Below are positions 5,995-37,664 of a stretch of DNA of 55,574 nucleotides, piece after piece. The translations under genes were made by a program, and so were the position numbers. Below the pieces are notes generated by a model that was not told where the DNA came from, did not search any database, and was given only the letters and a program-made list of their open reading frames with translations. The first letter of the stretch is position 1; the number at the start of each line of letters is the position of its first letter. The stretch comes from Gracilinanus agilis (Eukaryota): NCBI RefSeq assembly GCF_016433145.1, contig NC_058131.1, positions 401,709,440 to 401,765,013 of the forward strand, written 5' to 3'.

Positions 5995-6052
5995 CCATAT
6001 GCTTTTAAAAAAGAAGCAAGAGAATATGAAGCATTTTAAAAAATATTTCTCT

Positions 6053-14398: not shown

Positions 14399-14432
<34 letters not shown>

Positions 14433-14770
14433 ATACAACAATTAAAGGAGGAAAAATGAGTATAACAATTAAAGGAGGAAAAAATCACACATACAATAAA
14501 AAATTAACATTGCAAAATTATAAAGAATAAGTATGGCTTGGGAGAAGATATGAGAAAACACCCTCACCTCACCTTTTCACAGAAGTGAAAGAACCAAAAT
14601 TGTTGCACATTGTGTATATTTCCAGGCTTTCTCAATATACTGATCAGTTATGCTGATTTTAAAATCTTTTTGTCTTTAAAAATGTCATTTTAAATATAGA
14701 ATGGCTCTCTTGGAGGAGAAGAGGAAGAATGCTGAAGGAAATTATGGTCTAAAAAATTAAGACATTAGCA
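12640..14770 (+). mobile_element. Degenerate marsupial L1 (RT to 3'UTR)
   Basis: tttgctgataatatgatggtgtacttagaaaatcct encodes FADNMMVYLENP; the ORF2 C-terminal and 3'UTR remnants are collinear with the L1 at 39.4-42.4 kb. Confidence 0.88.
13711..13862 (+). mobile_element. Internal L2 (RT N-terminal) fragment embedded in the L1
   Basis: Aligns by eye (~65-70%) to 9857-10005 of the L2 relic (ctgtcta.tggct...cttgatcca...agaaggcca.ctaca). Confidence 0.7.
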
Positions 14771-15660
14771 AAAATTAATTTAAAAAAAGAGAAAGTGTCC
14801 TATTTCTGAGTTGTCTAGAAGGGGAAAAAATACTTTCCATTAAGGGGCAACTCTGCTAAGCTTTCAAATGATCAATGAAAAGTAAAGAAAAGAGTAAAAC
14901 AATGTCAAGAAGAAGGAAAAAGTATTACTATCTTTCTGTTAGAGAAGGTAGGATATGTCCATTGTCATATTACAATAGTAAAAAATAATAACATAAGAAT
15001 AAATAAAAGAATGAAATTAACTACCAAAAAAAGTTACTGGAAGTGTCTAAATCTCTTTTTCCAATAGAAAAAAAAAGTTAAGGATAAATAGTTTGATTTT
15101 GCTTAATCCTAACTGCAGTATTATGTAGTTATGTAGACAAGCAGCCTCTCTTTCTTTAACTCATCTAAAACGTCAGATTAGACTAGTACTAACAGATAAA
15201 TATTTTTAGAAAAAGAAATGTTATGGAAGTGTGGCAAATAGTTCATCCTCAAACCCTGGGTAGAAATCAAGTATATGAGAAACAGGAAAGCATTTTATCA
15301 TTAAACACCTTGAGCATCTTCTACATCCTCTGCGAAAAATGGAAAGATTGTTGACTATCTTTTAGAATTTTAGTTAAAAAGTCACTGTCTTACAACCAGA
15401 ACAAAAGAAACGAGGAAGGAAAAGGGAAAGGGAAAGAGAGTGTTGCAGAAAAGATAGTACAGTTTTCCAAATTAAGGGCAAGAAAAGCTTTACTTAGTGA
15501 TTTCTGTGGTTCATACTTTGCAATGGAATGAAAGACGGAGAACCACTTGCTGGGGTGTATTTAATGACGTATCTAATTGTTAGTCAGTAAGAATTCTCAG
15601 TGGTGGAGAAAAACAATTACAAAGACCTGTGTTTGATCTTAGAACAAACAAGAACCTCAC

Positions 15661-18075
15661 CTTAGAAGGAGAGTTCTGGTCCCTGAGTTCTGGCAGACCA
15701 CCAACCTTGGAGTTGATTTCAGCAGCCAGGTTACCCTTCAAGTCTGTTGGGTCCGTTTTCAGAAAAGTGAATTCGCTCTGTCCTGGATCCGAAGTAAGGC
15801 ACACCTCGTAGGAATATGGCAAGGGCAACGTCCCATTGATGCATTTACTAGTGACTCTGGGACCCAGGCTAGAATAAAGATCAGTGGGAAGAGAATCCAA
15901 TACTAAATGCTGTTTGGGTTTTCGGCACTTAAAAACAACCGCAAACACTGCGGTCAAGAGGAATACAAAAGATACTAAAGCCAATGCAATGACTAGAAAA
16001 AAGTTAACTTTCCATTGCGTGGGTAGATTTTCCGAGCCCTCCTCCTTCATCTCAGGCAACGCCTCCTGCAGACTGTCTGCAAAGACTAGATGCAGAGCCA
16101 CAGTGGCCGACAGAGGGGGCTGGCCTCCATCCTGCACGGAGACCAGAAGGCGGTGCCGAGCTGCATCTCGGTCAGTCAAAGCCCTCGCAGTCCTGATCTC
16201 GCCTGTGCGCAGCCCCAGGCTGAAGAGCCCGGGATCCGTGGCCTGCAGCACGCGGTAGGCCAACCAGGCGTTGTGTCCAGAGTCTGCGTCCACTGCCACC
16301 ACCTTGCTGACCAAGTATCCTGGCTCTGCAGATCGAGGAACCATGTCGAAGAGGGCCGATCTGTCAGGTCCCAGGGCGGGGTAGAGGATGTTCGGGGCGT
16401 TGTCATTGCGGTCCAAGATGAACACTCGCAGGGTGACGTTGGCACAAAGGGCTGGGGAGCCCGAGTCACAGGCCTGCAGCGTCAGTTCGAAGGTTCGGAC
16501 CTGCTCGTAGTCGAAGGAGCGCTGAGCGAAGATGTCTCCGCTGTGGCCATTGACAGACACGCAGGAGGACAGAGGCAGAGGGGCCAAGTCACTGCCGAGG
16601 ATGGAATAGGACACTCGGCCATTCTCTTCCAGGTCCGAGTCAGAGGCTGAGACCTTCGCGATGGAGGCTCCAGAAGGGTTGTTCTCAGGGACGTAAACAA
16701 CGTAGGAAGGTTGAAGGAAAACCGGAGGATTGTCATTGACGTCAGCTACGTGCAGGGTGAAGGTTTTGCTGGTGTACAAAGGAGGGTTTCCCTTGTCTGT
16801 GGCAGTCAATGTGATATTATACTCTGGGGTCTGCTCGCGATCCAGGGCTCCGTCTGTCAGTAGCTTGTAGTAATTCTTGGAAGAGGACTCTATTCTGAAA
16901 GGAATGGAATATGATTGCATATAACAAGATATTTCTCCATTGCTCCCAGAATCTATGTCACGTGTTTTGAAGAGGGCAATCACTGTGCCAGGTTCGGAGT
17001 CTTCCAGGACAGAACTGACTAGAGATGTTAATATTATTTCAGGTGCGTTGTCATTCTCGTCTTGTATGTCTATGACAACTTTACACTGTGTGGAAAGACC
17101 TCCCCCATCCTTAGCCTCTATATCCATTGTAAACTTTTTTGTGTCCTCAAAATCCAGGGAAATTTTGGTTCTGATTTCACCTGTGTTTGGATCCAGGGAG
17201 AACATCTGCCGGGCATTCTGGGTAACACCGGTGAAGGAGAAAGTGATTTCCGAATTTACTCCTTCATCTTTATCGGTAGCAGTCAGGCGAAGTACGGAGG
17301 AGCCCGGGGGTAAATTCTCCAGTAGATTAGCTCTATAGAGGCCCTGACTGAAGACTGGTGGATTATCATTGGCATCGGTGACATTTATCTTGATTTGAGT
17401 GGTGCCACTGCGAGGAGGATCTCCCCCATCCATAGCTGTTAGAACCAAATAATGAGAACTTTGCATTTCTCGATCGAGAGGTTTCTCCAATACTAATTCT
17501 GGGTATTTTCCACCACCTGGATTTTCTCTTACCACCAATGAGAAATATTGGCCAATACTTAGATAGTAATTGTTGAGTGAATAGACAGTTATATCGGGAT
17601 CATTGGCTGATTCAAGAATCCATCTCGCACCTGGCAAAGTGGACTCAATAATTTCTAAATTTATTTCATTCTGACTGAATTGTGGAGCATGATCATTAAT
17701 ATCCTCAATCGCCACAGTGATGTGAAAAATATTTAAGGGATTTTCAACCATAGCTTCCAACTGTAGTTCACATACTGTTCTTTCCTTACATATCTCCTCC
17801 CGATCTATTCTGTCGCTGACCAATAATTCCCCGCTCTCCTTGCTCACGCTAAAGTATTCCCTCTCTGCACTCACCCGCAGCTTCCGAGTCGGCAAGTCCT
17901 GGACCTCCAGCCCAAGATCCTTGGCGAGGTTCCCCACCACCGATCCTTTCGCCATCTCCTCAGGAATTGAGTAGCTGATGTGCTCGGAAAGCGTCCGGCA
18001 GAACAAAGACGCCCAGAAGGCACAGAGTACTTGCAGTTTAGGGGGTTGTCTTCTCTCTGCCGAGTTCCTTCCCAT
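15661..18075 (-). CDS. PCDHGB: Protocadherin gamma B-type variable exon (3'-most in window; tentatively gamma-B8-like), 805 codons
   Basis: ORF 15580..18075 has YSIPEE, C-X5-C in EC1 (CKERTVC), repeated DRE/DxNDN motifs, B-type EC6 (HNAWLAYRVLQ, LHLVFADSLQEALP) and a TM helix. Donor AAG|GTGAGG at 15661/15660, phase 0. The ORF tail past the donor is intron read-through. Confidence 0.95.
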
Positions 18076-18324
18076 CCTAACTTCCTTTTCGCCGTCTTTC
18101 CAGCCCTGCCAAACAGCTGTTTATACCACTGCAGCAATCCTTCAGAAATATGAGACTGGGCCCCCACTATATTCCTCTGAAGTGAGAGTTTCTCAGAGAA
18201 GGGTCTATGGCGCAGCGAACGCGACTGAGTCTGTGCTGCTCTTCTCTCTGCTGTATCTTATGACGGAGCAGGAAATCACCCTCAGGAAGCTCCAGGAGCA
18301 ATCGTGTTTCAGCTCTAATTCCGT

Positions 18325-18366
18325 ACTGGCCAGCAGCGGCACCCAGAGTTTCATTCCCAAATTGCA
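18325..18366 (-). promoter_or_regulatory. Pcdh promoter CSE (CGCT box, CTCF-binding) of exon 15661-18075
   Basis: Coding strand TGCAA-N13-CTCTGGGTGCCGCTGCTGGCCAGT, about 260 nt upstream of the ATG in a CpG-rich segment. Confidence 0.9.
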
Positions 18367-19140
18367 ACATTATTTCGCTTCCTAAAACCAATCTTTGCAA
18401 CTCAAGAGCTTGATGATTTTTCTCCATGTGAGAGCTCCGATTTATAAACATTCAATGGGTTTGAATTATTTGATTTGTATGTGCATGGATTACTCTGCAC
18501 GTTATCACACTTCATGTATGAAAAACGATTATACTTCATGTATCCTATCAGTCTAATTAGTATGGGGGGTTTTATGGTTTACTGAGGTTTATATTACAAA
18601 CCCAGTGCTGTTGCAAAGGCGGACAACTTTACAAATTTGAAGAACAGAAAAAATACAAGAAATGTCGTACTTTGCCCACCCATTGACAAGGCCAGTGTGG
18701 TAATGATCTCAAAGACATTTTGGAGAGGGGAAGGGGACAGACAGACAAACAGAGACACAAAGACAGATTGTCAGAGAGAGAGACAGACAGACCGACATGG
18801 ATGGGATAGTTTCCTTTCGTGACAGCTAGTAGTGTGAAATCAAGGTTTACAAAAACCATCAATAGTTATAATTTTCTTATAATGAAAACATAATTTTATT
18901 AATTTGTTGATAAATCTTTGAGTTGAAATTATCTACAACGATTGTTTAAAAAGGCACATTAAAAATCGTTTTCAGATAGATTAGAATCCATCTTTCAGAT
19001 TCCCACAACGATTGGGTGGGGGGGAGGGAAATCTAACTGATTATGATGAACATCATTCTCACCAATGATAATCCAGTACAAAGAATTGCTGATTTTAAAA
19101 CCTGCCATTAACAACATTATTTTGAAAAGGAACATAAAAG

Positions 19141-19255
19141 CTTGTGACCCTGGGAAAGTCACTTAACCCTCATTGCCTAGCTCTTACAGCTCTTCTGCCT
19201 TGGAACCAATATACAGTATTGGTACTAAGATGGAAAGTAAGGGCTAAAATGTTTT
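19141..19255 (+). mobile_element. 5'-truncated SINE1_Mdo-type fragment
   Basis: tgtgaccctgggaaagtcacttaaccctcattgcctagc...ggaaccaatatacagtattgg. Confidence 0.8.
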
Positions 19256-19714
19256 AAAAATAAAGAAATAAGCTATTCCTGTTCACTTTAATGGACATTT
19301 TTGTTTCAGTTTGGCTTTAATGATCATGATCCTTTTCTTTAAAATCCTAGAAGACATCCAGCACTTCCTTATCTGTTGAAAAGCTATTTACCTCAATTCA
19401 AACCCTTAGAGAACCCATTTTCGTTCCTATGTTTAGGGTTAGGAGAATTGTTTTGGAAACAGGACAGTGAGCAGAATAATGATTCTGAACCGTTTCTTTA
19501 GGAGTGTGCTTGAATTTGTATCGAGAAAGAATTAAGCATAAAAAAAGAATTGAAGAACATTCAAGTGTCTTACAAATTCATCATTCACCGTCTGAATTAT
19601 GAAATTAGATTCCTTTGGGAAGTCCAGGGAAGGATACTAAGCTTACCATGTATTATTATGAATTTTCAAGTCAAAGCACAATTGGAAGAATAACAAAAGT
19701 AGGTAAAACTTAGG

Positions 19715-21100
19715 AAACTCTGTTTTTATAAAAGGTGATATCATAAGTAAATTAGGAAAGCATGGAAAAAATATACCTGTCAGATGTATGGATAAGGGAA
19801 GAATTTATGACCAAATGAGATAGAGAGGTTTATTGGAAGTAACATGAATAGTTTTGATTACATGAAAATAAAAGGGTTTTGCACAAAGAAAACCAATGCA
19901 GCAAAAATTAGAAGAAAAATAGGAAACTGGGGGGAAATTTTGTAGCAAATTTTTTTATAAAGGGCTCATTCCTCAAATGTATGGGAAACCAAGCCAAATT
20001 TATAAAAAATATGAACCATTCCCCAACTGACAAATGATCAAATGATATGAGCAGGTAGTTTTCAGAACAAGACATTAAAACTATTAAAAGTCACTTGAAA
20101 AAATGCTCTAAATCACTAATTTGAAAAAAACAAACCAAAATGATTTTGAGATGCCACCTCACATTTATAGTATTGGCTAATATGACAGAAAAGGAAAATG
20201 ACATGTTAGAGGGGATGTAGAAAAATTGGGGCACCAATGCACTGTAGGTAGAGTTGTGAAATAGTTAAACCATTTTAGAGAACAATTTGGAACTACACGC
20301 AAAGGGCTATAAAACTGTACATACCGATTGACCCAACAATACCATGTCTAGGTCTGAATCCTAAAGAGATCAAATGAAAAGGAGAAGACCTTATTGGTAT
20401 AAAAATATTTAGAGCAGCTCTTTTTGTAGTGACAAGGAACTGGAAATGGAGGGGATGCCCATCAATTAAAGAATGGCTTGACAAGCTGTAGTATGTGATT
20501 GTGATGGGATAATATTGTGCTCTAAGAAATGAGAAGTGGGATGTTTCAGAAAAACACGGTGAGACTTAAATGAAGAGAAAGCCCAAATCACTTATTACAA
20601 ATTGGACTACATTCTCCATGGGGCATCTCTCTCCTACATCTCTATTGATTCTGAGATTGGCATCCTCTATGTTCTGCTCTCTTTTTACTATGAAGAGAAC
20701 CAGGAGAACATTGTACACATTGACAGCAATATTGTAGCGATGATCAACTGGGACTTATCTACTCTGATCAAGACAATGATCCAAGACTTCCTAAGTACCC
20801 GTGATGAAAAATGCTATTTCCAGGAAAAGAATTGATGAACTCTGAGTACAGAATGAAGCATACTTATAAAACATTCTTTCTTTCTTTGCCTGTGTGCTTT
20901 CTTTTGCAACATGGATAATATAGAAATTTTTTTGCATGACTTCACATGTAAAATGAATATCATCTTGCTTGCCTTCTCAAGGGGTGGGGAAAGAAAGAGA
21001 AGAAGAGAATTTGGAAGTTAAAAAATTTAAAAATGAATGTTAAAATTTTTTGCAGGTAACTGGGAAATTATTAATGCAATGAATAAAAATATATGAAAAA
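19715..21100 (+). mobile_element. 5'-truncated marsupial L1 (ORF2 C-terminus and 3'UTR), interrupted by a Pcdh fragment
   Basis: Collinear with 40.6-41.9 kb; reverse ORF 20293..20484 is the typical antisense reading of the L1 end. Confidence 0.88.
20571..20694 (+). pseudogene. Inverted 124-nt fragment of Pcdh gamma-A EC5 coding sequence inserted in an L1 relic
   Basis: Reads EEKAQITYYKLDYILHGASLSYISIDSEIGILYVLLSFYYE on +. Hand alignment to the reverse complement of 22713-22839 gives 23 substitutions plus one codon gap (~81%). Flanked by ATGAAGAGAA at 20570-20579 and 20690-20699. Confidence 0.88.
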
Positions 21101-21872
21101 AAAGCTCCCTGATGAAATTCTTTAATTATAGCCTCGTTCTATAAGATCTCTGGTTTTTAAATAGAATATCTTCAATACCATTATTTGGTGATGAATCTAT
21201 AGTTTAATCCTCAGTAAGACATACGTTGTGTTTTACTCTAGAGTGCATATACTATTCTATCACCCTCTTTCCTGAACAATAAACTACAAAGGAGAGGCCA
21301 GATATGTCATAAAAGGATAACAAATTTCACTTGGGTGATAGAATATGCTAAATGAAAACCTAAAGACTTAAATGCTAAGATTCCTTGCCCAGAAGAAAGC
21401 CTGAGTTGGTCAGAAGAAGATGAGTTTGCCCTAAGTCCAGGAGAGAGCAGATGATAGCTAAAACATCAATATCCATAACTTTCTATGAGCATTTTCAGAC
21501 TAAGACAATGAACTTTTTGAACCAGCAAAAAAAAAAAAAATGGGTGTTTGTCTAGTGCTAACTTAGGAACCTCTTTAGCAGTATTCTAACCAATCAGAAA
21601 GAATCAATTGTCTACACAAATATAACAGTTCAAATGTCAGGAAGTTAAATGAAGAGTATCACTCAGAGTAGAATAATAGATATTGCATTAAGCCATTAGT
21701 TGAATGAAGACAAATAAAGGAATGTCATATTTTAGCAACCTAGCAATGATCAGATAAAAATAAATTTAAATTTCATAAATGAATTATTCTATCATCTTTG
21801 TAGAAAATGAAAAACAAACATAATAGATAATGAAGAAATAAGATAATTATTGATAAGGTGAAAGAAACTCAC

Positions 21873-24278
21873 AGAAATGAGAGCAGGATCTCTGGCAGAA
21901 AACCTTGAATCCTCTGGTATTAATAAGGGCTCCTTTTTCTCACAACTCTGCTGACTAATTAAAGTATCTGCATAATTGGGCTGGGGGAAAAGCAATTGGC
22001 TTTTCCTAGAATCCATGGTGAGGGAAACCTCATGGGAATAAGTCTGGAGAAAAGCCTGAACTCCTTCAAGACCCATAAACTGGGAAGGTGGGCCACTGGA
22101 GGACTGTAACAGCTGTGAATTTCGCCAGGACCTTAACTTGATCACCAATAAGACAATGATGAAGACAAAGAACAGAGAAGACACCACAGCCACTGCAATT
22201 ACAAGATAAAGAGTGAGATTTGCGTCTTCCAGGTCTCCTGGAGTCTCCGGATTGCTGAGATCTGAGAGGATCTCGGGGATGCTGTCAGCCACAGCCACTG
22301 TGACACTAACTGTTGCAGATAAAGGAGGTTCCCCATTGTCAGAGACTGCCACCGTTAGAATCTGTTTGAGGGAGTCTTTGTCATGGAAAGTTCGGGCTGT
22401 CCTGATCTCACCTGTGTGCAGATCCACTGAGAAAAGCCCAGGCTCTGTTACTTTCAGCAGACGGTAGGATAGCCAGGCATTCTGGCCAGAGTCTGCATCC
22501 ACTACCACTACCTTGGTCACCAGGTAGCCTGGCTCTGCAGAGCGAGGAGCCAACTCCACTCCTGTGGAGCCATCAGTGGGGAAAGTGGGGTACAGGATTT
22601 CTGGGGCATTATCATTTTGATCCAGGATGAACAGAGTTAGAGACACGTTGCTGCTGAGAGGTGGATCGCCCCAGTCCTTGGCAGTTACTTGAAGCTGCAA
22701 ATCCCGAAATTGTTCGTAATCAAAAGAGCACAGAGCATAGAGGACGCCAGTCTCAGAGTTAATAGAGATGTAGGAGGAGAGAGAGGCCCCATAGAAAATA
22801 TAATCCGTAATGGAGTAAGTGATTCGGGCGTTCTCTTCAGTGTCAGAGTCACTAGCGGTCACTGAATAAATGGAAGAGCCTCTTGGATTATTTTCAGGTA
22901 TGTAGGCAGAATAGGACTTCTGACTGAAGCTGGGAGGGTTGTCGTTGGTGTCTTCTACTTGTAGGGAGATGTGAATGTTTGTAGATAACAATGGAGTTCC
23001 TTGGTCTATGGCTGTTACTGTGACATTGTACATGGATGTCTGTTCCCTGTCTAGAGTTCTGTCAGTCACTAAACTGTAATAATTTGCATATGATTTTTCT
23101 AATTTAAAAGGCAAGTGACCATGAATGGAACACATAATGTGACCATTATTCCCAGAGTCTCGGTCATGCACCTTTAAAAGGGCAATCACAGTTCCTGGAG
23201 GTGAGTTTTCAGGGATTGAACTGGCAGAAGAAGTGACCGTCACCTCCGGAGGATTATCATTCACATCTAGTACCCTGACCAGTACCTTTGCACTAGTTAG
23301 AAGACCACCACCATCCTGCCCTTGAATTTCCATTTCATAGATTTTCGATTCCTCATAATCCAGTGATTCTTCAAGTATTAGTTCCCCTGTCCGGGAATTT
23401 AGCTGGAAAATCTCTGAAGCTTTGTCGTCGATGTTCCGAAAAGAATAAGTTACTTCTCCGTTGACTCCCTCATCCGAATCCGTAGCGTTCACTGCTAGCA
23501 GCAGCTTCCCCTTGGGCACGTTTTCTCGAACACTCACGCTGTACAAGGACTGAGTAAATACTGGGGCGTTGTCGTTCGCGTCTAGGACCAACACGCGGAT
23601 TCGAGCAGTTCCAGACAGGCCTGGATCTCCTCCATCCAAGGCCTTGAGGATAAGCTGGTGAACAGATTCTTCCTCCCGGTCCAGGGCCCGTTCCAACACC
23701 AGTTCCGGGTACTTGGCCCCATCGATCCCACTTAGCACATTCAGAGAAAAGTGATTGTTCTGACTTAGCTGGTAGCTCTGGAGGGAATTTACTCCTATGT
23801 CTGGATCCCTCGCACTGGGAAGCCCAAAACGTATACCCGGGGCCGCGTTTTCATTAATTTTTATTTCCACTTCATCTGTCCGGAAGCGTGGAGCGTTATC
23901 ATTAATGTCCGTCACTTCTATTTCTAAGCCATAAATTTTCACTTTGTCCTCCATTAAAATTTCCACATTTAAAAGACAACTAGAAATTCCAAGACAAATT
24001 TTCTCTCTGTCTATTCTGTCCGCGGTGATTAAGCTGCCGCTTCTGACATTGAGAGCGAAATGTTGCTTACCTCCGGAAACTATGCGGGCTCCTCGCTCTG
24101 ACAGCTTGTGGGGCTCCAGACCCAGGTCCTTGGCGATGTCACCCACGAAAGAGCCCTTCTCCATCTCCTCGGGAATAGAGTAATGGATATGCACAGCCCG
24201 GGTCTCCCACAGCGATCCCAGGAGACAGCAAAGCAGGATTCTCCCTCTGTAGTGCCAAAGCTTCTGCGGAGAGATCAT
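21873..24278 (-). CDS. PCDHGA: Protocadherin gamma A-type variable exon (resembles gamma-A11 from recall), 802 codons
   Basis: ORF 21792..24281, whose first codon is GTG; the first ATG is at 24278. Six EC repeats, A-type motifs QNAWLSY and [14 protein letters not shown]. Donor TCT|GTGAGT at 21873/21872, phase 0. [14 protein letters not shown] and [13 protein letters not shown] match my recall of human PCDHGA11. Confidence 0.95.
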
Positions 24279-24516
24279 CACTGCATCCCCAGCTGAATGG
24301 TTTGGATTTCCTATTTTTTCCGGTTATCTCTGAACTGATTCTTGTTTTTCCTCAAGACATCGGGAATATTGACATTCACTGAAGGAGTCCGAAAGGCTCT
24401 GGGGCTCTTGATCTGGGTCTCCGTGAAAATCAGCAATGAGCCTTTCGGTTCTGTGGTCTTTGTATTGTGAGAGAAAAGACAGGCAGGCGGGATCTCGCAG
24501 AACCTTTTTCTTCCGG

Positions 24517-24558
24517 ATTGGTGAACAGCGACGCCCAGAGCCTTAATCAATTATTGCA
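24517..24558 (-). promoter_or_regulatory. Pcdh promoter CSE with CCAAT box of exon 21873-24278
   Basis: Coding strand TGCAA-N13-CTCTGGGCGTCGCTGTTCACCAAT, about 250 nt upstream of the ATG. Confidence 0.9.
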
Positions 24559-25289
24559 TCCTTTTAGGTAAACTTCGTAGATTAACAAAATATTAACGAT
24601 GTATGTGATTTTCTTGTTTTTGTTTTACATGCATTTCTTTAAGAGAAGGCAACAGTGATTGTATGCAGTTTTCGGTTAGTTACGCAAACATGAATGCTCC
24701 TTGTAGCTTTAAATTTCAATTACCTTTTCCCATTACACCCTTGGAATACTAGGATTTCATTACTAGGGATTCTTATAAGATGAAAAAAATCAATGAAGTA
24801 ACTTAATTGTGTTTAAAATGTGAATACATTTTAGGAGTGAATTCTCATCTCCAAAAAGTTCCAGCATTTGTTTTATCCTTTTATTTTAAAGAAAACATTC
24901 CCCATATAATTTGTCGTGTATAACCCTCAAAGTTTTACCTAATTAGCCCAAAATGCCAAAATGGACTCTATAAGAACAAGAATATATTGAGTTCTCATTT
25001 TAAAACGAGTATGTAAGAAAATAACTTTAATAAAAGAAGTAACTTTTTTTTTATCATTCTTAAGGGTAAGAAAATGATGAGAAATAGTCTAAACCACATT
25101 GAAAAGATTATTCCAATTTACCATTCTAATTCTGTTGATAAAATTCATCAGAAACCATAGTGGATATAATGTTACCACATATAATTAAAGATTCAGGTTG
25201 ATGGACATGTTAAACAATGCTAATGGGAGTGAAAATTCTTTTACTTTATCTCATACCTATGTAGAACTAAGGAGGGAATTATATTATTA

Positions 25290-25388
25290 TGCATCTACCG
25301 CCACCACCTTGGTGACCAGATGGCCAGGCTCAGCTGATCCAGGGATCATGTCAAAGAGGGCTGAGCTGTCAGGGTCCAGTAGTGGATA
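25290..25388 (-). pseudogene. 99-nt same-orientation copy of the EC5-EC6 linker/EC6 start of the adjacent exon, in the intron
   Basis: 93/99 identical to 26168-26266. Flanked by the 12-nt direct repeat ATATTATTATGC at 25281-25292 and 25386-25397. Confidence 0.95.
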
Positions 25389-25537
25389 TTATTATGCCAT
25401 AGGCATAGAACTATATCAATCAACCAAAAATAAAGCATTTTTAGATCAAATATATAGCTATAATGATTTGCATATGGTTTTAGGTAGAAGATGTTAGTGA
25501 AGTTCAATATTTGGTAATATATTTAGTAGAACCCTAC

Positions 25538-27955
25538 CTGTCCAAGAGTGTTGGAATGACAATTGACATCACCATTTAAGTTATTCTTGAATAACATGGA
25601 AGCAATATTTGTGTTGAAAAGTTCTGGAGGACACTGGTCAGTTGATTTCAGGTAATTAAATTCTGTATGTCCTGGATCTGGTGCTACACACAGATTATAG
25701 GAATAAGGCAAAGTTCCTTCACTGTAGTTTGGGGGGATATTGAGTTCAGATTTAGAGTGAAGATCCCCCCGGAAACAGCTCCATACTCTAGGATCAGAGG
25801 ATCTCTGAAGGTGCAGAGCAATGGCCAATGTCACAGTCACGAGAAATAGTAGAGATATTAGGGCCAGAGCCACAACCAAGTAAAACTGTATCTCAGATTG
25901 GGATTCGGAGGTGGTTGTACGCTCCTCCTTCATCTCAGGCAATGCCTCCTGCAGACTGTCTGCAAAGACTAGATGCAGAGCCACAGTGGCCGACAGAGGG
26001 GGCTGGCCTCCATCCTGCACGGAGACCAGAAGGCGGTGCCGAGCTGCATCTCGGTCAGTCAAAGCCCTCGCAGTCCTGATCTCGCCTGTGCGCAGCCCCA
26101 GGCTGAAGAGCCCGGGATCCGTGGCCTGCAGCACGCGGTAGGCCAACCAGGCGTTGTGTCCAGAGTCTGCGTCCACTGCCACCACCTTGGTGACCAGATG
26201 GCCAGGCTCAGCTGATCGAGGGATCATGTCAAAGAGGGCTGAGCTGTCGGGGTCCAGTGGTGGATAGAGGATGTTTGGGGCATTGTCATTGCTGTCCAAG
26301 ATAAACACTTGTAAGGTGACATTGGTACAGAGGGAGGGAGAACCTGCATCCTGGGCCTGCACAATCAGTTCAAAGGTATGAACTTGCTCATAGTCAAAGG
26401 AACGCTGAGCAAATAAGTCCCCACTGTTACCATTAACAGACACATAGGAGGATAGAGGCAGGAAGGGTAAGTTGCTACTGAGGATGGAGTAGGACACCTG
26501 GCCATTTTTTTCCAGGTCTGGGTCAGTGGCTGAGATTTGGGCTATGGAGGCTCCAGAGGGATTGTTCTCAGGTACATAAATGACATATGAGGTTTGGAGG
26601 AAAGTGGGGGGATTGTCATTGATGTCTGCAATGTACAGGGAAATTATTTTGCTGGTGGACAGAGCAGGATTCCCCTTGTCTGTGGCTGTCACAGTAATGT
26701 TATATTCCAAGGTTTGCTCCCGATCCAGGGCCCCATCTGTCAATAACTTGTAGTAATTCCTGGAAGAGGACTCTATTTTAAAGGGAACAGTTCCTTCTAT
26801 ACCACACACAATCTCTCCATTCTCTCCAGTATCTCTATCATCTGTTTTAATCAGAGCAATTACTGTCCCAGGCACTGTGTCCTCAGGGATAGGATTAGAC
26901 AGAGACGTTAATGTTATTTCGGGAACATTGTCATTTTCATCCCTAACTTCTAAAACAACTTTGCATTGTGCAACCAGAGAGCCAGCATCCTTGGCTTCTA
27001 CATCCATGGTATATACCTTTGTTTCTTCAAAGTCTAGAGTCTCCTTAATAACGATTTCTCCAGTGGTTGGATCCAGTCTAAACTTGTGTGAAGCATCTTT
27101 GGTGATGCTTGTGAAGGAGAAGGTGATCTCTGCATTAACCCCCTCGTCTTTATCCGTGGCTGTCACTTGCAGTACCGAGGATCCAGAGGGCAAGTTCTCT
27201 GACACGCTTGCTCGGTAGACATCTTGACTGAAGACAGGCGGATTGTCATTAGCATCCGTGACTCTGATCCTGATCTGAGCGGTGCTACTTCGGATGGGAT
27301 CGCCCCCATCAACTGCGGTCAAGATTAAGTGGAGGGAATTCTGGATTTCTCGATCGAGGGATTTCTCCACCACCATTTCTGGATATTTACTGCCATCAGG
27401 ATTATCTTTCACTCTCAGAGAAAAATAGGGGTTCGAATTTATCTGGTAAAATTGCAAAGAATTGAGCCCAACATCTGGATCGTCAGCTGATTCAAGAATT
27501 AATCTAGTACCTGGCAGTATAGACTCACTGATTTCTAAATTTAATTCATTTCGACTGAATCGAGGCTCGTGATCGTTAATATCCTGAATCGTCACAACCA
27601 CATGGAAGATATTTAAGGGATTTTCCACTACTATTTCCAACTGTAATTCACAGGCCTGATTTTTTCTGCATATGTATTCTCGATCTATTCTGTCACTGAC
27701 CAGCAGATCCCCATTGTCTGCGTCCACGGAAAAGTATTTCTTCTCCCCAGTAACTCGCATTTTCCTGGCGGGCAAGACCCGGATACCGATCCCCAGATCT
27801 TTGGCGAGATTCCCCACCACTGACCCTTTCTCCATTTCCTCTGGAATGGAGTACCGGACCTGCTCGGAAAGCACGCAGCAGAACAAAGAAGTCAAGAAGG
27901 GAAACAGTACTTGCCTCCTCATTGTTATTCCTGGTTCCCGGGAGCGGCGCCGCAT
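25538..27955 (-). CDS. PCDHGB: Protocadherin gamma B-type variable exon (B6/B7-like), 806 codons
   Basis: ORF 25523..27955, six EC repeats, EGTLPYSYNLCVA cytoplasmic motif. Donor CAG|GTAGGG at 25538/25537, phase 0. An alternative in-frame ATG lies at 27922. Confidence 0.95.
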
Positions 27956-29995: not shown

Positions 29996-30407
29996 ATACT
30001 AATTTTAAAGGAGGTATCTTGTATAGCCATAAGCCTTTGGATCATGTGACCACAATATGAATAGTATCATTTGGGAGGATTCAGCTGTTGACTCTGACCT
30101 CATTAACCTGGCTTTTTAATAAATTTTGATGATTAATGGGATAAACTATTGTTTTCACTAGGATAAGAATTAAAATTTAAATGTTATACTTAAATGCCTA
30201 AATAATTATTATATGGAGCACAATATCAGATGGATGAGGTAGATATGACATAGTCCATTTCAATAACATGACAATTTCAATAAAAGCTAAATAGGAATTG
30301 AGGAAACCTTATTGAATTCTTATTAAAATTCTTATTATTCCAAACCCAACCTAACACTATTAGATCATGAAGAAATAAGAGTAAAATAGACAAGGACACA
30401 AACTCAC

Positions 30408-32828
30408 GGGAACCAAAGGAGGATCACGAGTGGAACACTTTGAATCTTCTGCTACTAAGAGTGGCTCCGTTTTTTCACAGCTGTGCTGACTTAAGAGGGT
30501 ATCAGCATAATTAGGTTGGGGAAATATCAAATGGCTCTTCCGAGAGTCAGTGGTGAGAGAAACCTCATGGGAATAAGTCTGGAGAAAAGCTTGAACCCCA
30601 TCAATGCCCAAGAAGTGAGAGGCAGGGACAACACCTAAATGGTTACTACCTGAACCTAAGAGCTGGGAGGTCCGCCACCTCCATATCCTGAGTGCCAGCA
30701 AGACAATGATGAAGGCAAAAAACAAGCAAGAAACTGAAGCTACAGCTATAACGAGGTAGAGTGTGAGGCTAGAATCTTTGAGGTGGGAGGAGGCCTCTTG
30801 GCTGCTAAGATCCGAGAGGATTTCAGGGATGCTGTCAGCCACTGCAACTGTGACACTGATCGTGGAAGACAGAGGCGGTTCCCCTTTGTCAGAGACCACC
30901 ACCACTAGACTCTGTTTGAGAGCGTCTTTGTCCATGAAAGCTCTGGCAGTCCTGATTTCTCCAGTGTGCAGATCCACAGAGAAGAGTCCAGGTTCTGTAA
31001 CCTTGAGTAGACGATAGGACAACCAGGCGTTCTGGCCAGAGTCTTTATCCACCGCCACCACCTTGGTCACCAGGTACCCTGGTTCTGCAGAGCGAGGAGC
31101 CAACTCCATTCCTGTGGAGCCATCGGTGGGGATGACGGGATACAAGATTTCTGGGGCATTGTCATTTTGATCCAGGATGAACAGAGTCAGAGACACATTG
31201 CTACTGAGAGGTGGATTCCCTGAGTCCCGGGCAGTCACTTGTAGCTGCAAGTCCCGGAACTGTTCGTAATCAAGGGATTGAAGAGAATAGAGGATGCCAT
31301 TCTCTGAATTAATGGAGATGTAGGAGGATAGAGGTGCCCCTTGGAAGATGTCCTCTTCAATAGAGTAGGTGACACGAGAGTTTTCTTCGCTGTCAGGATC
31401 ACAGGCTGTCACAGAATAAATGGAAGCTCCTCTAACGTTATTTTCCTTGATGTAGGCAGTGTAGGATGCCTGACCAAAGATGGGAGGGTTGTCGTTGATG
31501 TCTGCCACCTGCAGGGAGATGTAAATGTCTGTGGAAAGGGGTGGGGAACCCTGGTCTATAGCTGTTACGGTGATATTGTACACAGAAATCTTCTCTCTAT
31601 CTAGAGTTCTATCTGTCACCAAACGATGATAACTGTCAATTGACTTGTCTAGTTTAAAAGGCAGATTCTCCGAGATAGAGCACGTGACTAAGCCATTCTC
31701 CCCAGAATCTTGGTCATGTACATTTAAAAGGGCAATTACAGTCCCTGGGGGAGAATCTTCGGTCACTGGGCTAAATAGAGAAGTGACAGTCACTTCCGGG
31801 CTATTATCATTTAAATCCAATATCGTAACCAGCACTTTAGCGCTTGCTAAAAAAGCACCACCATCCTCAGCTTGTATTTCTATTTCGTAGAAATTCGATT
31901 TCTCATAGTCTAAATCTCCAGATGTTGTTATTTCTCCACTTCTCGAGTTAACCTGGAATATCTGTAGATTTTTTTCACTTTGTCTCCGGAATGAATAGGC
32001 CACGTCCCCATTGACTCCCTCATCTGGATCAGTAGCGTTCACAGTGAGCAGCAGTGTCCCCTTAGGCACGTTCTCGGGAACATTCACGCTATATATCAAC
32101 TGAGTAAACACTGGTGGGTTGTCATTGACATCGAGCACCACCACGCGGACTTGAGCTGAGCCAGAACGCACTGGGTCTCCCCCATCCGAGGCCGTGAGGA
32201 TGAGGTGGTGAACAGGCTCCTCCTCTCGGTCCAGGGCCCGCTCCAGCACCAACTGTGGGTACTTGGCCCCGTCACCTCGGCTTTGCACAAGCAGAGAGAA
32301 GTGGTGATTGGAGCTCAGCTTATAGTCCTGAAGGGAATTCACCCCCACATCCGGATCAAATGCTTCCGGAAGAGGAAATCGCATTCCAGGTGCTGCGGTT
32401 TCAGTGATTTTAACTCCTACTTGTTCTACTTGGAATTTCGGGACATTATCATTAATATCTGTTATTTCCACTTCTACCGCAAAGAGTTTTACGTTATCCT
32501 CTACTAGCACATTGAAATTCAGCCGGCACTGGGCCTTCTGAGCGCAGAGCTCCTCCCTGTCTATTCTGTCCGCGGTGACTAAGCTGCCGCTTCTGACATT
32601 GAGAGAGAAATGTTGCTTCTTACCTCTGGAGACGATGCGGACTCTGCGCTCCGACAGTTCCCACGACTGCAGGCCCAGGTCCTTGGCGATATCGCCCACG
32701 AACGAGCCCTTCTCCATCTCCTCCGGCACTGAGTAGCGGATCTGAGTGGCCCCAGAGTCCCACATCCCCAGGAGAAAACAAAGCAGGATTTGTCCAGCGT
32801 AGTCCCGGCGCCTCTGAAAAGCAGCCAT
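30408..32828 (-). CDS. PCDHGA: Protocadherin gamma A-type variable exon (A9/A10-like), 807 codons
   Basis: ORF 30360..32828 starts MAA, six EC repeats, canonical [30 protein letters not shown] motif. Donor CCC|GTGAGT at 30408/30407, phase 0. Confidence 0.95.
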
Positions 32829-33058
32829 TGCTTTCTTGCTGCCAAATTATCGAGTTTTCCAATAATGCAGACTGTGCCTAGATCAATTCTTGTATCCTCT
32901 GTATCTTAAGCTATCGGCAGCCAAAGATTGAGATGCAAGCTTGGAGAGCTGGGTGGCTGAGTCTCCGTGCAGCCCAGACTGTGTATATCTGATATTCTGG
33001 GGCTTTGTGCTTTTGAGTTGTGAGTCGTGCCGGATCTCTCCACGCAGTTTTCTTCCCG

Positions 33059-33100
33059 ATTGGTGAACAGCGGCGCCCAGAGTCCTAATCAATTACTGCA
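33059..33100 (-). promoter_or_regulatory. Pcdh promoter CSE with CCAAT box of exon 30408-32828
   Basis: Coding strand TGCAG-N13-CTCTGGGCGCCGCTGTTCACCAAT. Confidence 0.9.
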
Positions 33101-33757
33101 TTCACGCACACATTTTGGGAAAAAAGGAAAACTGCCTAACATTTGTTATATACTTTATTTCTTGCTACATAACATTGTTCCCCATTTTCTCCTTACTATA
33201 TTCTGTGGGAAGCTATTCCTTGTTTTTTTTTCCCGCAAGTGGGAGGGACAAAGAGAGATAAAGTTCAATAGTACAATTAAATGTTAGATTCCAATAGAAT
33301 GTTTGTTAGTCTTAATTTAAACTTTATTATGTTTACATTTGGCAGATTTTCCTGAATGCCCTTGGAAACCGAGCTCTTTTTCATCTTATGTATTTCATAA
33401 GGCAGGAAATAATTTTACTTTAATTTCCGTCTCTTTTAGAAGTAGCAATTTAAATACTCCAACTCTTTTTAGTGTTTTCAGTCCTAGAATGACTGTATAA
33501 AAACATATGACTTCTTAAATATATTAAATTTATATATAGTATATATATTAAATATGTAACATCACACGCTTGTACGTTAGGATTTCATTTAACCAGCACT
33601 GCTGGAGATTAATCTTTCGTGGAAGACAGCTTTCCTATGACTTTCATTTTTCTTGAGATTACTGGGATGGTGTAAGAAATAGAAGATATGAAGATATCAA
33701 TAAAACTATTTTTTTACAGGAAGAAAAAGACCTACGGGTTCCAACGCTATTGCTACC

Positions 33758-33941: not shown

Positions 33942-34973
33942 CTATTGCTATCTTTTAAGAATGTGCAGTATAGACTTTATTTTCTATTGAGATAACTATT
34001 GAAAATATGTGTTCTAATTTTAGGTACTTCATAAGAAAGCCAAGAGCCAGAATCTCTACTAAGCTCATCGAGCAGAAAATAAAACAAAACAAACAAAAAC
34101 CCCCTAATAAATAGGGAGCCTTATCATAAAAGGAAGGTTGAAGATGACATTGGGTCTGTTTTAGAAATGAAGGCAGGAAACATGGCCATAACTAATCTAG
34201 TCCCAGGGGCTAAGGTTTCCAAGCAACAAGATACTAATATTTATTTTTAAAAACTCTGCTTATGGAATGAATGCAAAAATGGATATGAGGGTAGGGAATT
34301 GTACATATTGGTGGAAACATAACCCTTTTCCCCTTCATACAAATATTCTTCTCTAGCATATAAGTAAAATCAAACCCAGAAAACACATTGATTTTGACTA
34401 GGAGAAAACTAGAATGCATTTTGCACGAAGTAAACTTGAACAGAAAGCTGGCATAGATTCAGCAGGTGAGAACAAAAAAAAAAAAAAATAAAATCTCTTT
34501 CTGAAGTTACCAAAAGCATAGAAAGGAAAAGGAGCTAAAAGAGAAGAAAGAGAAATAATGTATCTTAGCTTTTGCTTTAAACTTCCCGTCTCCACAATCT
34601 ACTTGGATGCATATTTGTTTTAAAATAACTAGCTATTCTCTTCCTCTCCTCTTTAGCAAGGTTTGGTGAATCCAGGAGCAGGAGGGAGCTACCTTTCAGG
34701 ATCTCAGGACAAGTATTACTACATTTCTTGAATTTGTCAAACCACCCACACTCTGATGGCCGTGTTTCTAAAATACACGGGAAGTTTTGGCACGGTGAAT
34801 AAAACACTTTGAAGATTGAAACGACAAAACCAGGATTACTAGATTACAGCTTTGTGATAGGCTATGTCTTTCCTGCAATGAATCACAAACTATAGTATTG
34901 ATATGTATTTTTGAGGAAACATGGAAATCGAACACAACAATGAAAAAGAAAAGATACTCAAAGGAAAGCTCAC

Positions 34974-37397
34974 CATATCTAGTTTCTCAGGGTACGAAGC
35001 TGAATCACTGATGCCAAAGGGTGGATATGAAGATCGAGATGAATCAAAGGAAAGGAGATCCTGTCCTGCGTTTAACGGACCATTGCATTTGGGGGCATTA
35101 AACCCTGGCTTTCCCTGGTCTGTGGCCACACAGAGATTGTAGGAATAAGGCAAAGTACCCTCCCCGTAGTTTGCGGGAAGGCCAGATCCAGACTTAGAGC
35201 AAAGATTTGGTCGGAAACATCCCCATTCTTCGGAACTGGAGGATTTTCGAAGGCGCATTGCGATGACCAGAATCACCGTGACCAGAAATAGCACTGAGAC
35301 TAGAGCCAAAGCGATTACCAAATAAAACTGTAACTCAGATTGTGGGTCTAATGTATCAGCGCGCTCCTCCCGCATCTCTGGCAGCGCCTCCTGAAGACTG
35401 TCGGCGAAAACCATATGCAGAGCCACAGTGGCCGAGAGAGGCGGCTGTCCATCATCCTGCACGGAGACCAGCAGGCGGTGCCGGGTAGAATCACGTTCGG
35501 TTAAGGCCCTAGCAGTCCGGACTTCGCCTGTGCGTAGCCCCAGGCTGAAGAGCCCCGGATCCGTGGCCTGCAGCACGTGGTAGGCCAACCAGGCATTGTG
35601 TCCCGAATCTGCATCTACTGCCACTACCTTGGTGATCAGGTATCCTGGCTCCGCCAAGCGAGGGACCATATCAAAGAGAACTGAGTTGTCGGGGCTCAAG
35701 GTGGGATAGAGGATGTTCGGTGCGTTATCATTTCCGTCCAAGATAAACACTTGCAGAGTAGCATTGGTGCAGAGGGCTGGGGAGCCTGAGTCACAAGCTT
35801 GAAGAATCACCTCGAATGTGCGGACTTGTTCATAGTCGAAGGAGCGCTGAGAGAAGATGTCCCCGTTGTGGCCACTGACAGACACATGGGAAGATCCTGG
35901 CGCACGATCGAGGTCACTCCTGATGATGGAATAGGACACCCGGCCATTCTCTCCTAGGTCCAGATCAGAGGCCGAGACTCTAGCAATAGAGGCTCCAGAG
36001 GGGTTATTCTCAGGGACATAAATGACATAAGAAGAGAGTAGGAAAACAGGAGGGTTATCATTAACGTCACCCACAACCAGGGTGAGGATTTTGCTGGTGG
36101 ACAGAGAGGGATTTCCTTTGTCTGTGGCAATCACTGTGATGTTATATTCTGGGATCCGTTCTCTGTCCAGGGGTCCATCTGTCATTAACTTGTAAGAATT
36201 TTTTGACGAAGACGATATTTTAAATGGGACATTTCCTTTTATTTCACAAGAGACCTCTCCATTGTGTCCAGAGTCTTTATCACGAGTTTTGATCAATGCA
36301 ATCACGGTTCTGGGCAAAATGTCCTCTGGAATTACGGAGGGTATGGATTGTAATAGAACCTCTGGGGCATTGTCATTTACGTCTAAAACTTCAATTTCAA
36401 TTGTGCACTGTGTAACAAGTCCACCTCCATCCCTAGCTTCCAACACTAAAGAGTAGTCTTTGTTCTTTTCAAAATCGATACTCGCTGCAGTTGTAATCTC
36501 TCCGCTATTAGCATCCAGATCGAATACGTGCCAAAAGTCTTGACCTGTACTTCGGAAAGAAAAGGTGATTTCTGCGTTGACAAGCTCATCTTTGTCGGTG
36601 GCTGTCACCTGAAGCACTGGGGAGCCCCGGGGAAGGTTCTCGGGAAGACTGACCCTGTAGACGTCCTGGCTGAACACTGGGGCATTATCATTAGCGTCTG
36701 TGATATTTATACGGATCTGAGCCGTGCTGCTTCGAGCAGGGTCCCCACCATCCACGGCAGTCAGGAACAACTGATGAGAACTCTGTGTCTCCCGATCTAG
36801 GGACTTCTCCAACACCAATTCTGGATATTTATTGCCATCTTTATTATGCTTATTCACTAGTGAGAAGTCAGTGCTGGGACTGAGTTGGTATTTTCGCAGA
36901 GAATTGATGCCGACATCTGCATCTTGTGCTGAAAGTAGGATAAACCTAGCCCCTGGCAGTGTAGACTCGCTGATTTGCAAATCAAATGTATCTTGACTGA
37001 ATTGTGGCGAATGGTCATTAATATCCTCTATCTCCACAGTTATGTGAAAAAAATTTAGTGGATTTTCAGCAACTGTTTCAAAATCGAGGACACACACAGG
37101 CTTTTTCCCGCAAAGCTGCTCTCGGTCTATTCTTTCTTTGATCACTAGTTCCCCAGTCTCTGTGCTCACAGCAAAGTATTCCCTATCTCCACTAACCCGC
37201 AGTTTCCGAGACTGCAAATCACGGATCTCCAGACCTAGATGTTTAGCGAGATTCCCAACTACAGACCCTTTCACCATTTCTTCTGGAATAGAATAGCGGA
37301 TTGGCTCTGGAAGTGCCAGGCGGAACAAAGACAAGAAGAAAGAAAACAGTACCTGCGATCTCAGTGCTCTCCCCCTCAGGTTAGAGTTTTTTCCCAT
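34974..37397 (-). CDS. PCDHGB: Protocadherin gamma B-type variable exon (B4/B5-like), 808 codons
   Basis: ORF 34890..37427 begins at a TTG; the first ATG (MGKNSN) is at 37397. Six EC repeats and EGTLPYSYNLCVA. Donor ATG|GTGAGC at 34974/34973, phase 0. Confidence 0.93.
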
Positions 37398-37664
37398 TCT
37401 TCTTACTCTATCCAGCTTTCTGTCCAACGCAGAGAAGTCTGGTTTAGCGTTTCCAATCGTCAGTGGAATCCTAAAAGTTTTCTGAGATTAAGGTGAGTAC
37501 TCCTACTTTGAGTGGTGACGAATCGGGGTATTTTGGGGCTGTGTATAGCGAGCCCCAGGAAGCGAATGCTGGCTCTTCCCTAGGATGTAATTCGGGTGAC
37601 TGAGGAGAGAATCGCCCAGCAGGAAGTTCCAATAAGTGGATCCGGCTTTCAGCTCTGCCTCTGC

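What the first reader, a model, noticed from the sequence alone, without database searches (positions are those of the whole stretch)
25281..25397. 99-nt exon fragment re-inserted ~150 nt downstream of its own splice donor with a perfect 12-nt duplication
Seen: 25290-25388 matches 26168-26266 at 93/99 positions in the same orientation. It is bracketed by ATATTATTATGC at 25281-25292 and 25386-25397. The repeat overlaps the donor-matching sequence by 3 nt at each end (TGC left, ATA right). There is no poly(A). Three of the six differences remove donor CpGs. Inference: a templated insertion at a staggered break, using the neighbouring exon (or its nascent RNA) as template. The donor is unambiguous because GPDSSALFDMIPRSAEPGHL-type codons (ggaccctgacagctcagccctctttgacatgatccc) are specific to this exon.
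Basis: partly seen in the sequence, partly recalled or inferred. Interest (0 to 1): 0.7.

Follow-up and report, generated by a model that had tools for sequence, protein, structure and literature searches.

The report
Exon fragment copied into neighbouring intron
A 99-base piece of a protocadherin-gamma exon was copied into the intron just downstream of that exon in a mouse-opossum ancestor; it is a real but ordinary and apparently functionless scar of error-prone DNA copying or repair.

Summary
Bases 25290-25388 match 26168-26266 at 93/99 on the same strand. ATATTATTATGC occurs only twice in the window, exactly bracketing the copy, and overlaps the donor match by 3 nt at each end.

The donor is codons 564-596 (EC5/EC6 border) of a minus-strand protocadherin gamma-B variable exon, the orthologue of genes named PCDHGB7 in Australian marsupials. 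The copy starts 149 nt past that exon's splice donor. It shares all 7 bases unique to the adjacent exon, while other paralogues in the window match only 61-77 of 99. Its flanks show no protocadherin homology and are 27-30% GC against 58% for the copy. Both amino-acid-changing differences arose in the copy, so it is decaying neutrally.

Best reading: a locally templated insertion primed on 3-nt microhomologies. This could be a replication template switch or synthesis-dependent break repair. The 12-nt duplication marks either re-entry 12 nt behind the departure point or a staggered break. A DNA template cannot be told from a nascent-RNA template.

This is a known kind of scar. The scan already noted a sister event in this window (20571-20694) and several elsewhere in this genome.

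Interest is low.

The parts
25538..27955 (-). Protocadherin gamma-B type variable exon (donor gene piece): ATG at 27955, splice donor CAG|GT at 25538|25537. The mechanical ORF runs on to a stop at 25523-25525.
   Evidence: The ORF is listed. Pfam finds Cadherin_2, five cadherin repeats and Cadherin_C_2. It is 86/85/81% identical to proteins named protocadherin gamma-B7 in Notamacropus, Macrotis and Sminthopsis, which continue into the constant region exactly after ...NTL(G/S)Q.
26168..26266 (-). Donor segment: codons 564-596 of the exon ([33 protein letters not shown]), end of EC5 / start of EC6.
   Evidence: It has 7 bases unique among the seven paralogous exons of the window, and the copy carries all 7.
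25290..25388 (-). The inserted copy, in the same orientation as the gene, 93/99 identical to the donor. The unambiguously inserted part is 25293-25385 (93 nt). The end triplets 25290-25292 (TGC) and 25386-25388 (ATA) are microhomologies shared by target and donor.
   Evidence: GC is 58% against 27-30% in the flanks. tblastn hits from all seven exons stop exactly at these ends. It differs by two nonsynonymous changes (P566L, R580G) at residues invariant in paralogues and orthologues, plus four third-position changes.
25281..25292 (.). Left copy of the 12-nt flanking direct repeat ATATTATTATGC (duplicated target sequence).
25386..25397 (.). Right copy of the 12-nt flanking direct repeat ATATTATTATGC.
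25393..25407 (.). Small palindrome TATGCC-ATA-GGCATA spanning the point where the original sequence was interrupted. It is a possible stall site, with weak support only.
   Evidence: Folded as DNA it gives -4.1 kcal/mol with z = -1.8, and 8 of 200 shuffles fold as well.

Best explanation
This is a locally templated insertion and a neutral mutational scar.

Proposed sequence of events, in an ancestor of this mouse opossum after the split from Australian marsupials:
1. A DNA 3' end in the intron, ending ...ATATTATTATGC, left its own template.
2. It paired through 3 nt (TGC) with the adjacent protocadherin gamma-B exon 878 nt away, on the same strand.
3. It copied 96 nt (codons 564-596), ending ...GGATA.
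4. It paired back through 3 nt (ATA) with the original site, 12 nt behind the point of departure. Those 12 nt now flank the insert as a direct repeat.

The same product arises in two ways. One is a replication-fork template switch (FoSTeS/MMBIR type). The other is synthesis-dependent repair of a break with 12-nt 3' overhangs. The sequence cannot separate them.

Shown: the anatomy, the donor identity, the neutral decay of the copy, and the lower bound on age. Inferred: the order of steps, DNA as the template, and the absence of function.
For: - Copy and donor are 93/99 identical in direct orientation, and the donor is retained.
- The 12-nt bracketing repeat is unique in the window. The background is 13 such pairs at all spacings 60-300 in 55.6 kb.
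- Exactly 3 nt of donor/target identity sit at each junction, with no similarity beyond them. The chance of at least 3 nt at both junctions is roughly (1/64)^2.
- There is no protocadherin homology in the flanks by blastn or tblastn. GC jumps from 27-30% to 58%.
- The copy shares 7/7 donor-unique bases. It also encodes L567, D568, I578 and H586, which three Australian orthologues lack.
- The two nonsynonymous differences hit residues invariant in all paralogues and orthologues, so they arose in the copy. The other four differences are synonymous third positions, as expected if part of the divergence accrued in the constrained exon.
- 6% divergence with CpG loss argues for an old, real event rather than an assembly artefact.
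- Microhomology-primed copying from a nearby template is the published signature of MMBIR-type templated insertions (PMC8421209) and of synthesis-dependent end joining (PMC7165422).
- A second event of the same build lies 4.7 kb away.
Against: - No pre-insertion allele was seen. Orthologous DNA and reads could not be obtained.
- The single copied tract (96-99 nt) and the template distance (780-878 nt) exceed what is typical of polymerase-theta insertions: 3-30 bp copied from DNA flanking the break (PMC7165422).
- They also exceed what MMBIR catalogues search for: inverted copies within 100 bp (PMC8421209).
- A 12-nt duplication also fits a staggered endonuclease cut of LINE-1 type.
- Nothing excludes an RNA template.
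- Three of the six differences cluster in the first 10 copied bases (P about 0.016 for one given end). This could mean sloppy initial synthesis, or later synonymous change or gene conversion in the exon; it is unresolved.
Confidence: 0.6

Rival explanations
1. RNA-templated patch. A nick or staggered cut in the intron, possibly made by LINE-1 ORF2p and giving the 12-nt target duplication, was repaired by reverse transcription of a local transcript primed on 3-nt microhomology. That transcript would be the nascent protocadherin pre-mRNA or an antisense RNA of the exon.
For: - A target duplication of 12 nt lies in the LINE-1 range, and TSD is the class-1 feature of templated sequence insertions (PMC5110952).
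- Donor and target lie in one transcription unit, 878 nt apart, and the copy is in gene orientation.
- Experimental templated insertions at breaks were reported to derive from RNA (PMC5110952).
- A top-strand 3' end ...TGC can pair with GCA of the sense RNA (read).
Against: - There is no poly(A), no polyadenylation signal and no good 5'-TTTT/A-3' site. The two possible first-nick sites read ATAT/A and ATGC/C.
- The insert lies within one exon, so no splice junction marks an RNA origin.
- The donor is local rather than distant, as expected for DNA template switching.
Confidence: 0.2
2. Templated insertion, but from another, closer gamma-B paralogue outside the 55-kb window, or from an allele since lost, rather than from the adjacent exon.
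For: The gamma array continues beyond both ends of the window (earlier notes). Those exons could not be read. Three clustered differences at one end of the copy resemble the state of other paralogues: GTA and GAT codons, as in exon 34890-37427.
Against: The copy carries all 7 bases that set the adjacent exon apart from the six other exons here. It also carries four residues that Australian orthologues of this exon lack. In-window paralogues match at only 61-77 of 99.
Confidence: 0.07
3. Relic of a decayed protocadherin pseudo-exon. Only its most conserved piece survives, perhaps refreshed by gene conversion from the neighbour.
For: The segment ([17 protein letters not shown]) is among the most conserved parts of these exons, and all six paralogues still hit it. 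Gene conversion is well known in these clusters (own knowledge).
Against: - Homology ends abruptly at both sides, for every paralogue, at the same bases.
- The flanks have no protein-level similarity even at E = 1.
- A perfect 12-nt repeat brackets it.
- The space between the splice donor and the next exon's promoter element is only about 1 kb, too short to hold a 2.4-kb exon relic.
Confidence: 0.03
4. Assembly artefact: a chimeric or mis-joined read consensus.
For: Reads could not be inspected.
Against: An artefactual duplication would be identical to its source. This copy differs at 6 of 99 positions in a pattern of CpG decay and relaxed constraint.
Confidence: 0.02

Closest known systems
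MMBIR / FoSTeS-type templated insertions (template switching at microhomology; PMC8421209)
   Same: The donor is retained. The insert is copied from a nearby template in cis. Short microhomology sits at both switch points. Copying returns to the original template close to the departure point.
   Different: Catalogued small events are mostly inverted copies taken from within about 100 bp, by design of the search. Here the copy is direct, is a single 96-99 nt tract, comes from 878 nt away, and the return leaves a 12-nt duplication. A replicative origin is not shown.
Polymerase-theta end-joining templated insertions (TINS; PMC7165422)
   Same: A 3' end primes on a 2-4 nt microhomology, copies, dissociates and re-anneals. 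3' overhangs at a break would explain the flanking duplication.
   Different: TINS are 3-30 bp, built from tracts rarely over 10 bp, and templated from DNA right beside the break. This tract is about ten times longer and its template is about 0.8 kb away.
Templated sequence insertion polymorphisms, classes 1 and 2 (PMC5110952)
   Same: A stretch of unrelated genomic sequence is pasted into a new place. It has a target duplication of 5 bp or more, as in class 1, and junction microhomology, as in class 2.
   Different: It lacks the poly(A), polyadenylation signal and TTTT/A site of class 1. It has the duplication that class 2 lacks. The donor is local, not distant. It fits neither class as defined.
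Short-range template-switch mutations in primate genomes (PMC5453318)
   Same: It is a germline, evolutionarily fixed product of a transient switch to a nearby template.
   Different: Those events replace sequence with an inverted copy over tens of bases. This one is a direct-orientation net insertion over a much longer jump.
Sister event in the same window, 20571-20694
   Same: A roughly 120-nt piece of the upstream protocadherin exon (22713-22839) is copied into the intron downstream of that exon. It is flanked by a perfect 10-nt direct repeat, ATGAAGAGAA, at 20570-20579 and 20690-20699.
   Different: It is inverted, older (79.5% identity) and 2 kb from its donor. The left repeat largely coincides with a 9-nt donor/target microhomology.

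Membership tests
Locally templated insertion by microhomology-mediated template switching (FoSTeS/MMBIR type) | The insert is a copy of nearby sequence and the donor is still in place. | tested here: met
   93/99 identity to a segment 878 nt away on the same strand, with the donor exon intact.
Locally templated insertion by microhomology-mediated template switching (FoSTeS/MMBIR type) | Microhomology at both switch junctions. | tested here: met
   TGC at the left junction and ATA at the right, with no identity beyond them.
Locally templated insertion by microhomology-mediated template switching (FoSTeS/MMBIR type) | Synthesis resumes on the original template close to the departure point. | tested here: met
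   Re-entry 12 nt behind the departure point would give the observed perfect 12-nt flanking repeat. A staggered break is an equally good reading.
Locally templated insertion by microhomology-mediated template switching (FoSTeS/MMBIR type) | A pre-insertion (empty) allele exists in relatives. | not tested
No marsupial DNA collection is otherwise on hand.
Locally templated insertion by microhomology-mediated template switching (FoSTeS/MMBIR type) | Arises during replication or break-induced replication. | not testable with these tools
   A fixed germline product carries no mark of the polymerase or of the cell-cycle phase.
Polymerase-theta end-joining templated insertion (TINS) | Insert of 3-30 bp identical to DNA flanking the break (PMC7165422). 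| tested here: not met
   A single tract of 96-99 nt, with the template 780-878 nt away.
Class 1 templated sequence insertion / LINE-1 ORF2p-mediated retro-insertion | Target-site duplication of at least 5 bp. | tested here: met
   12-nt perfect duplication.
Class 1 templated sequence insertion / LINE-1 ORF2p-mediated retro-insertion | Non-templated poly(A) of 10-40 nt, preceded by a polyadenylation signal. | tested here: not met
   No A or T run and no AATAAA/ATTAAA on either strand of 25281-25397 (read).
Class 1 templated sequence insertion / LINE-1 ORF2p-mediated retro-insertion | Insertion at a 5'-TTTT/A-3' site. | tested here: inconclusive
   The two candidate first-nick sites read ATAT/A (minus strand at the left end) and ATGC/C (plus strand at the right end). 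The first is at best a degenerate match.
Class 2 templated sequence insertion (break patch from distant RNA/DNA) | No target duplication; donor from a distant region. | tested here: not met
   A 12-nt duplication is present and the donor is 878 nt away.
Processed pseudogene / retrocopy | Spliced exon junctions and a poly(A) tail. | tested here: not met
   The fragment is internal to one exon (codons 564-596) and has no poly(A).
Clustered protocadherin gamma, B-type variable exon (the donor) | One large exon encoding signal peptide, six cadherin repeats, transmembrane and proximal cytoplasmic part, ending in a splice donor joined to shared constant exons. | tested here: met
   Pfam finds Cadherin_2, cadherin x5 and Cadherin_C_2. 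It is 81-86% identical to marsupial proteins named protocadherin gamma-B7, whose constant region begins exactly at the CAG|GT of 25538|25537.

The most novel reading that the evidence does not exclude
Germline breaks in the protocadherin-gamma array may be patched repeatedly by copying the nascent pre-mRNA, or an exon-borne antisense RNA, of the variable exon just upstream. Both single-copy local duplications in this window draw on the EC5-EC6 part of the exon immediately 5' of the intron they landed in, and both carry 10-12 nt flanking duplications. If so, the scars would record transcript-templated repair at a locus known for stochastic promoter choice.
Probability: 0.08. Interest if true: 0.55.

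Novelty: new member of a known kind. Interest (0 to 1): 0.2.

Why it matters
On its own it matters little. It is one more fixed, neutral scar of microhomology-primed copying, in an intron, with no sign of function.

Its modest value is as a clean specimen. Both junctions, the duplicated target and the surviving donor are all readable. The donor is under selection, which allows the changes to be assigned to the copy or to the exon.

Together with the sister event 4.7 kb away and the other locally templated insertions the scan has noted in this genome, it could feed a census of insert length, jump distance, orientation, microhomology and flanking duplication. Such a census would say how common kilobase-range template switches are in marsupial germlines, and whether transcripts ever serve as templates.

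It is also a rare-genomic-change marker for didelphid phylogeny once presence or absence is scored in relatives.

Tried and rejected
The protein word search used only 26303-27955, beside that stretch. Later work on the stretch was local: scripts, alignment and folding.

2. Orthologous empty site. No orthologous intron could be fetched.

3. Paralogous empty site. The intron 24282-25522 has no homologue downstream of the other six exons. The only hit is a promoter element shared by A-type exons.

4. Relic hypothesis. blastn at word size 7 and tblastn at E = 1 found no protocadherin signal in the flanks.

5. Third event claimed by the 'candidate system' note, starting at 13711. Nothing exon-like was found in 13300-14300.

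6. Enrichment of exon donors. There are only two single-copy local duplications in the window, both exon-derived. Exons make up about 31% of the window, and conserved donors stay detectable longer, so this is not significant.

7. Hairpin at the target site as a stall signal. It is present but weak: 8 of 200 shuffles fold as well.

8. The bacterial promoter/terminator scan is irrelevant to this genome and was ignored.

9. Tandem-repeat origin of the 12-mer is excluded.

Full report
**1. What is there**

The window carries seven large minus-strand ORFs of 805-845 aa, spaced 5-7 kb apart. The one at 25523-27955 has Cadherin_2, five cadherin repeats and Cadherin_C_2.

Its first 551 residues were searched alone, from 26303-27955 (see section 6). 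The nearest relatives are proteins named protocadherin gamma-B7 in Notamacropus eugenii, Macrotis lagotis and Sminthopsis crassicaudata. Over the whole exon these are 86%, 85% and 81% identical.

In that alignment the orthologues pass from ...NTLSQ into the shared constant region exactly where the window reads CAG|GT at 25538|25537. So this is a gamma-B type variable exon with its splice donor at 25538.

The window is, by inference, from Gracilinanus agilis or a very close relative:
- ORF 15580-18075 is 100% identical to a protein listed as the window's own, on a contig of 725,203,407 nt.
- ORF 34890-37427 is 99.9% identical to another G. agilis protein.

**2. The observation**

Bases 25290-25388 match 26168-26266 at 93 of 99 positions, without gaps, on the same strand.

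ATATTATTATGC occurs twice in the window and nowhere else, at 25281-25292 and 25386-25397. Shuffles expect 0.01. Across the whole window there are only 13 perfect 12-nt direct repeats at any spacing from 60 to 300 nt. The 12-mer is not part of a tandem array.

The repeat overlaps the donor match by TGC on the left and ATA on the right. One base further out, on either side, copy and donor flanks are unrelated.

In gene orientation the copy begins 149 nt after the splice donor. There is no poly(A) and no polyadenylation signal. The only slip is a one-residue mistranslation of the peptide.

**3. Which exon was copied, and is it a relic?**

The copied stretch is exactly codons 564-596, at the EC5/EC6 border.

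Evidence that the adjacent exon is the donor:
- The other six exons of the window match the copy at 61-77 of 99 positions, against 93 for the adjacent exon.
- At all 7 positions where the adjacent exon differs from every other exon here, the copy has the adjacent exon's base.
- The copy encodes L567, D568, I578 and H586. The three Australian orthologues have M/T, E, V and Y at these places.

So the donor is this exon in its opossum-lineage state, and the event post-dates the split from Australian marsupials. Exons outside the window could not be examined, which leaves a small doubt.

Evidence against a decayed pseudo-exon:
- tblastn with all seven exon proteins finds the copy and stops at the same two bases for every query.
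- It finds nothing else between the exons down to E = 1, apart from the sister event described in section 7.
- Nucleotide searches agree.
- GC is 58% in the copy and 27-30% on either side.

**4. State of the copy**

There are six differences.

Two change the protein: P566L and R580G. Both residues are invariant in all six paralogues and three orthologues, so both changes arose in the copy.

Four are synonymous third positions and cannot be assigned. An excess of synonymous differences is what one expects if part of the divergence accrued in the constrained exon.

Three differences sit on donor CpGs: two CG>CA and one transversion. At a fourth the copy keeps a CpG that the exon has lost.

The Jukes-Cantor distance is 0.063, and the Poisson 95% range on six events gives 2-13%. 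This is the pattern of an old, unconstrained copy, and it argues against an assembly artefact.

Three differences fall in the first ten copied bases (P about 0.016 for a given end). All three are third positions. I therefore lean to later synonymous change or conversion in the exon rather than sloppy first synthesis, but this is open.

**5. Mechanism**

The junctions read as follows:
- Target: ...AATT ATATTATTATGC CATAGG...
- Donor: ...GAGTC TGC [93 nt] ATA GAGG...
- Product: target 12-mer, 93 nt, target 12-mer.

A 3' end ...TATGC can pair with the donor through TGC, be extended by 96 nt to ...GGATA, and pair back through ATA at the first bases of the same 12-mer. This yields the product exactly.

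Two processes give this outcome and cannot be told apart here:
- A replication template switch with re-entry 12 nt behind the departure point (FoSTeS/MMBIR type; PMC8421209).
- Synthesis-dependent joining of a break with 12-nt 3' overhangs.

Canonical polymerase-theta insertions are much shorter and are templated right beside the break (PMC7165422), so I do not file it there.

Nor does it meet either class of templated sequence insertions (PMC5110952). It has the target duplication of class 1 but no poly(A), no signal and no TTTT/A site. It has the microhomology of class 2 but also a duplication and a local donor.

An RNA template (the nascent pre-mRNA contains both donor and target) is not excluded, but nothing requires it.

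A small palindrome spans the interruption point (25393-25407). It is only marginally better than shuffles, so it is a weak hint of a stall site.

No function is indicated. The copy decays neutrally, sits in an intron about 730 nt upstream of the next exon's conserved promoter element, and adds no open frame.

**6. What could not be done**

- The protein word search therefore used only 26303-27955.
- The empty-site test, the read check and a scan of the rest of the cluster remain to be done.

**7. Context**

A self-comparison of the window finds only two single-copy local duplications. One is this event. The other is an inverted, older copy (79.5%) of 22713-22839 at 20571-20694, flanked by a perfect 10-nt repeat. 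An earlier agent already described it as a repair scar (s1-153903).

The 'recurrent patching system' proposed for 13711-25397 (s1-154059) is not borne out:
- I find no third fragment near 13711.
- Two exon donors out of two is unremarkable when exons fill about 31% of the window.
- Conserved donors also stay recognisable longer.

The scan has noted several other locally templated insertions elsewhere in this genome. The kind is common there.

**8. Verdict**

The break geometry and the nature of the template are unproven.

It is a new member of a known kind and of low interest. It is useful mainly as a clean specimen and as a phylogenetic presence/absence marker.

Noticed in passing
window 20570-20699 (donor 22713-22839): A second exon-derived insert: an inverted copy, 79.5% identical, of the EC5 part of exon 21792-24281, lying in the intron downstream of that exon. 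It is flanked by perfect 10-nt ATGAAGAGAA at 20570-20579 and 20690-20699. The left repeat coincides with a 9-nt match to the donor. It has the same build as the finding and was already followed up by another agent.
   Followed up: partly
window 24506-24559, 33048-33101, 45258-45324: A conserved 54-69 nt element (91% and 77% identity) lies 218-225 nt upstream of the ATG of the three A-type exons (21792-24281, 30360-32828, 42623-45040). Position and conservation fit the conserved promoter sequence element of clustered protocadherins (own knowledge). No such hit was seen for the B-type exons at this sensitivity.
   Followed up: no
window 15580-50589: The seven variable exons alternate between two types. 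B-like exons (NILYP...ALFDM) are at 15580, 25523, 34890 and 48136. A-like exons (EILYP...GSTG.EL) are at 21792, 30360 and 42623. This matches the interleaved gamma-A/gamma-B layout of other mammals.
   Followed up: partly
window 13300-14300: The earlier 'candidate system' note starts at 13711, but I find nothing resembling a protocadherin exon there, by blastn at word size 7 or tblastn at E = 10.
   Followed up: yes
window 5808-6251, 8796-9003, 11722-11811, 12282-12428: A multi-copy interspersed repeat (SINE-like) is present. It includes a roughly 430-nt stretch at 5810-6242 that is 80% self-complementary, i.e. two copies head to head. One pair (5808-6006 vs 8805-9003) is 93% identical.
   Followed up: no
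window 8000-11000: About 3 kb has a strong strand asymmetry (GC skew -0.27 to -0.47, AT skew -0.11 to -0.26). It has no long ORF and no tandem array. It may be an old antisense retroelement; it is unexplained.
   Followed up: partly
window 25393-25407: A 15-nt palindrome, TATGCC-ATA-GGCATA, lies exactly at the point where the intron was interrupted. As DNA it folds at -4.1 kcal/mol, and 8 of 200 shuffles fold as well.
   Followed up: yes
window 25523-27955 vs protein search: No Monodelphis domestica protein above 67% identity to this exon's first 551 residues appeared among the best 120 hits, whereas three Australian marsupials have 82-87% orthologues over those residues. By contrast, exon 48136-50589 has a 93% Monodelphis counterpart. 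The Monodelphis orthologue may be unannotated or lost.
   Followed up: no
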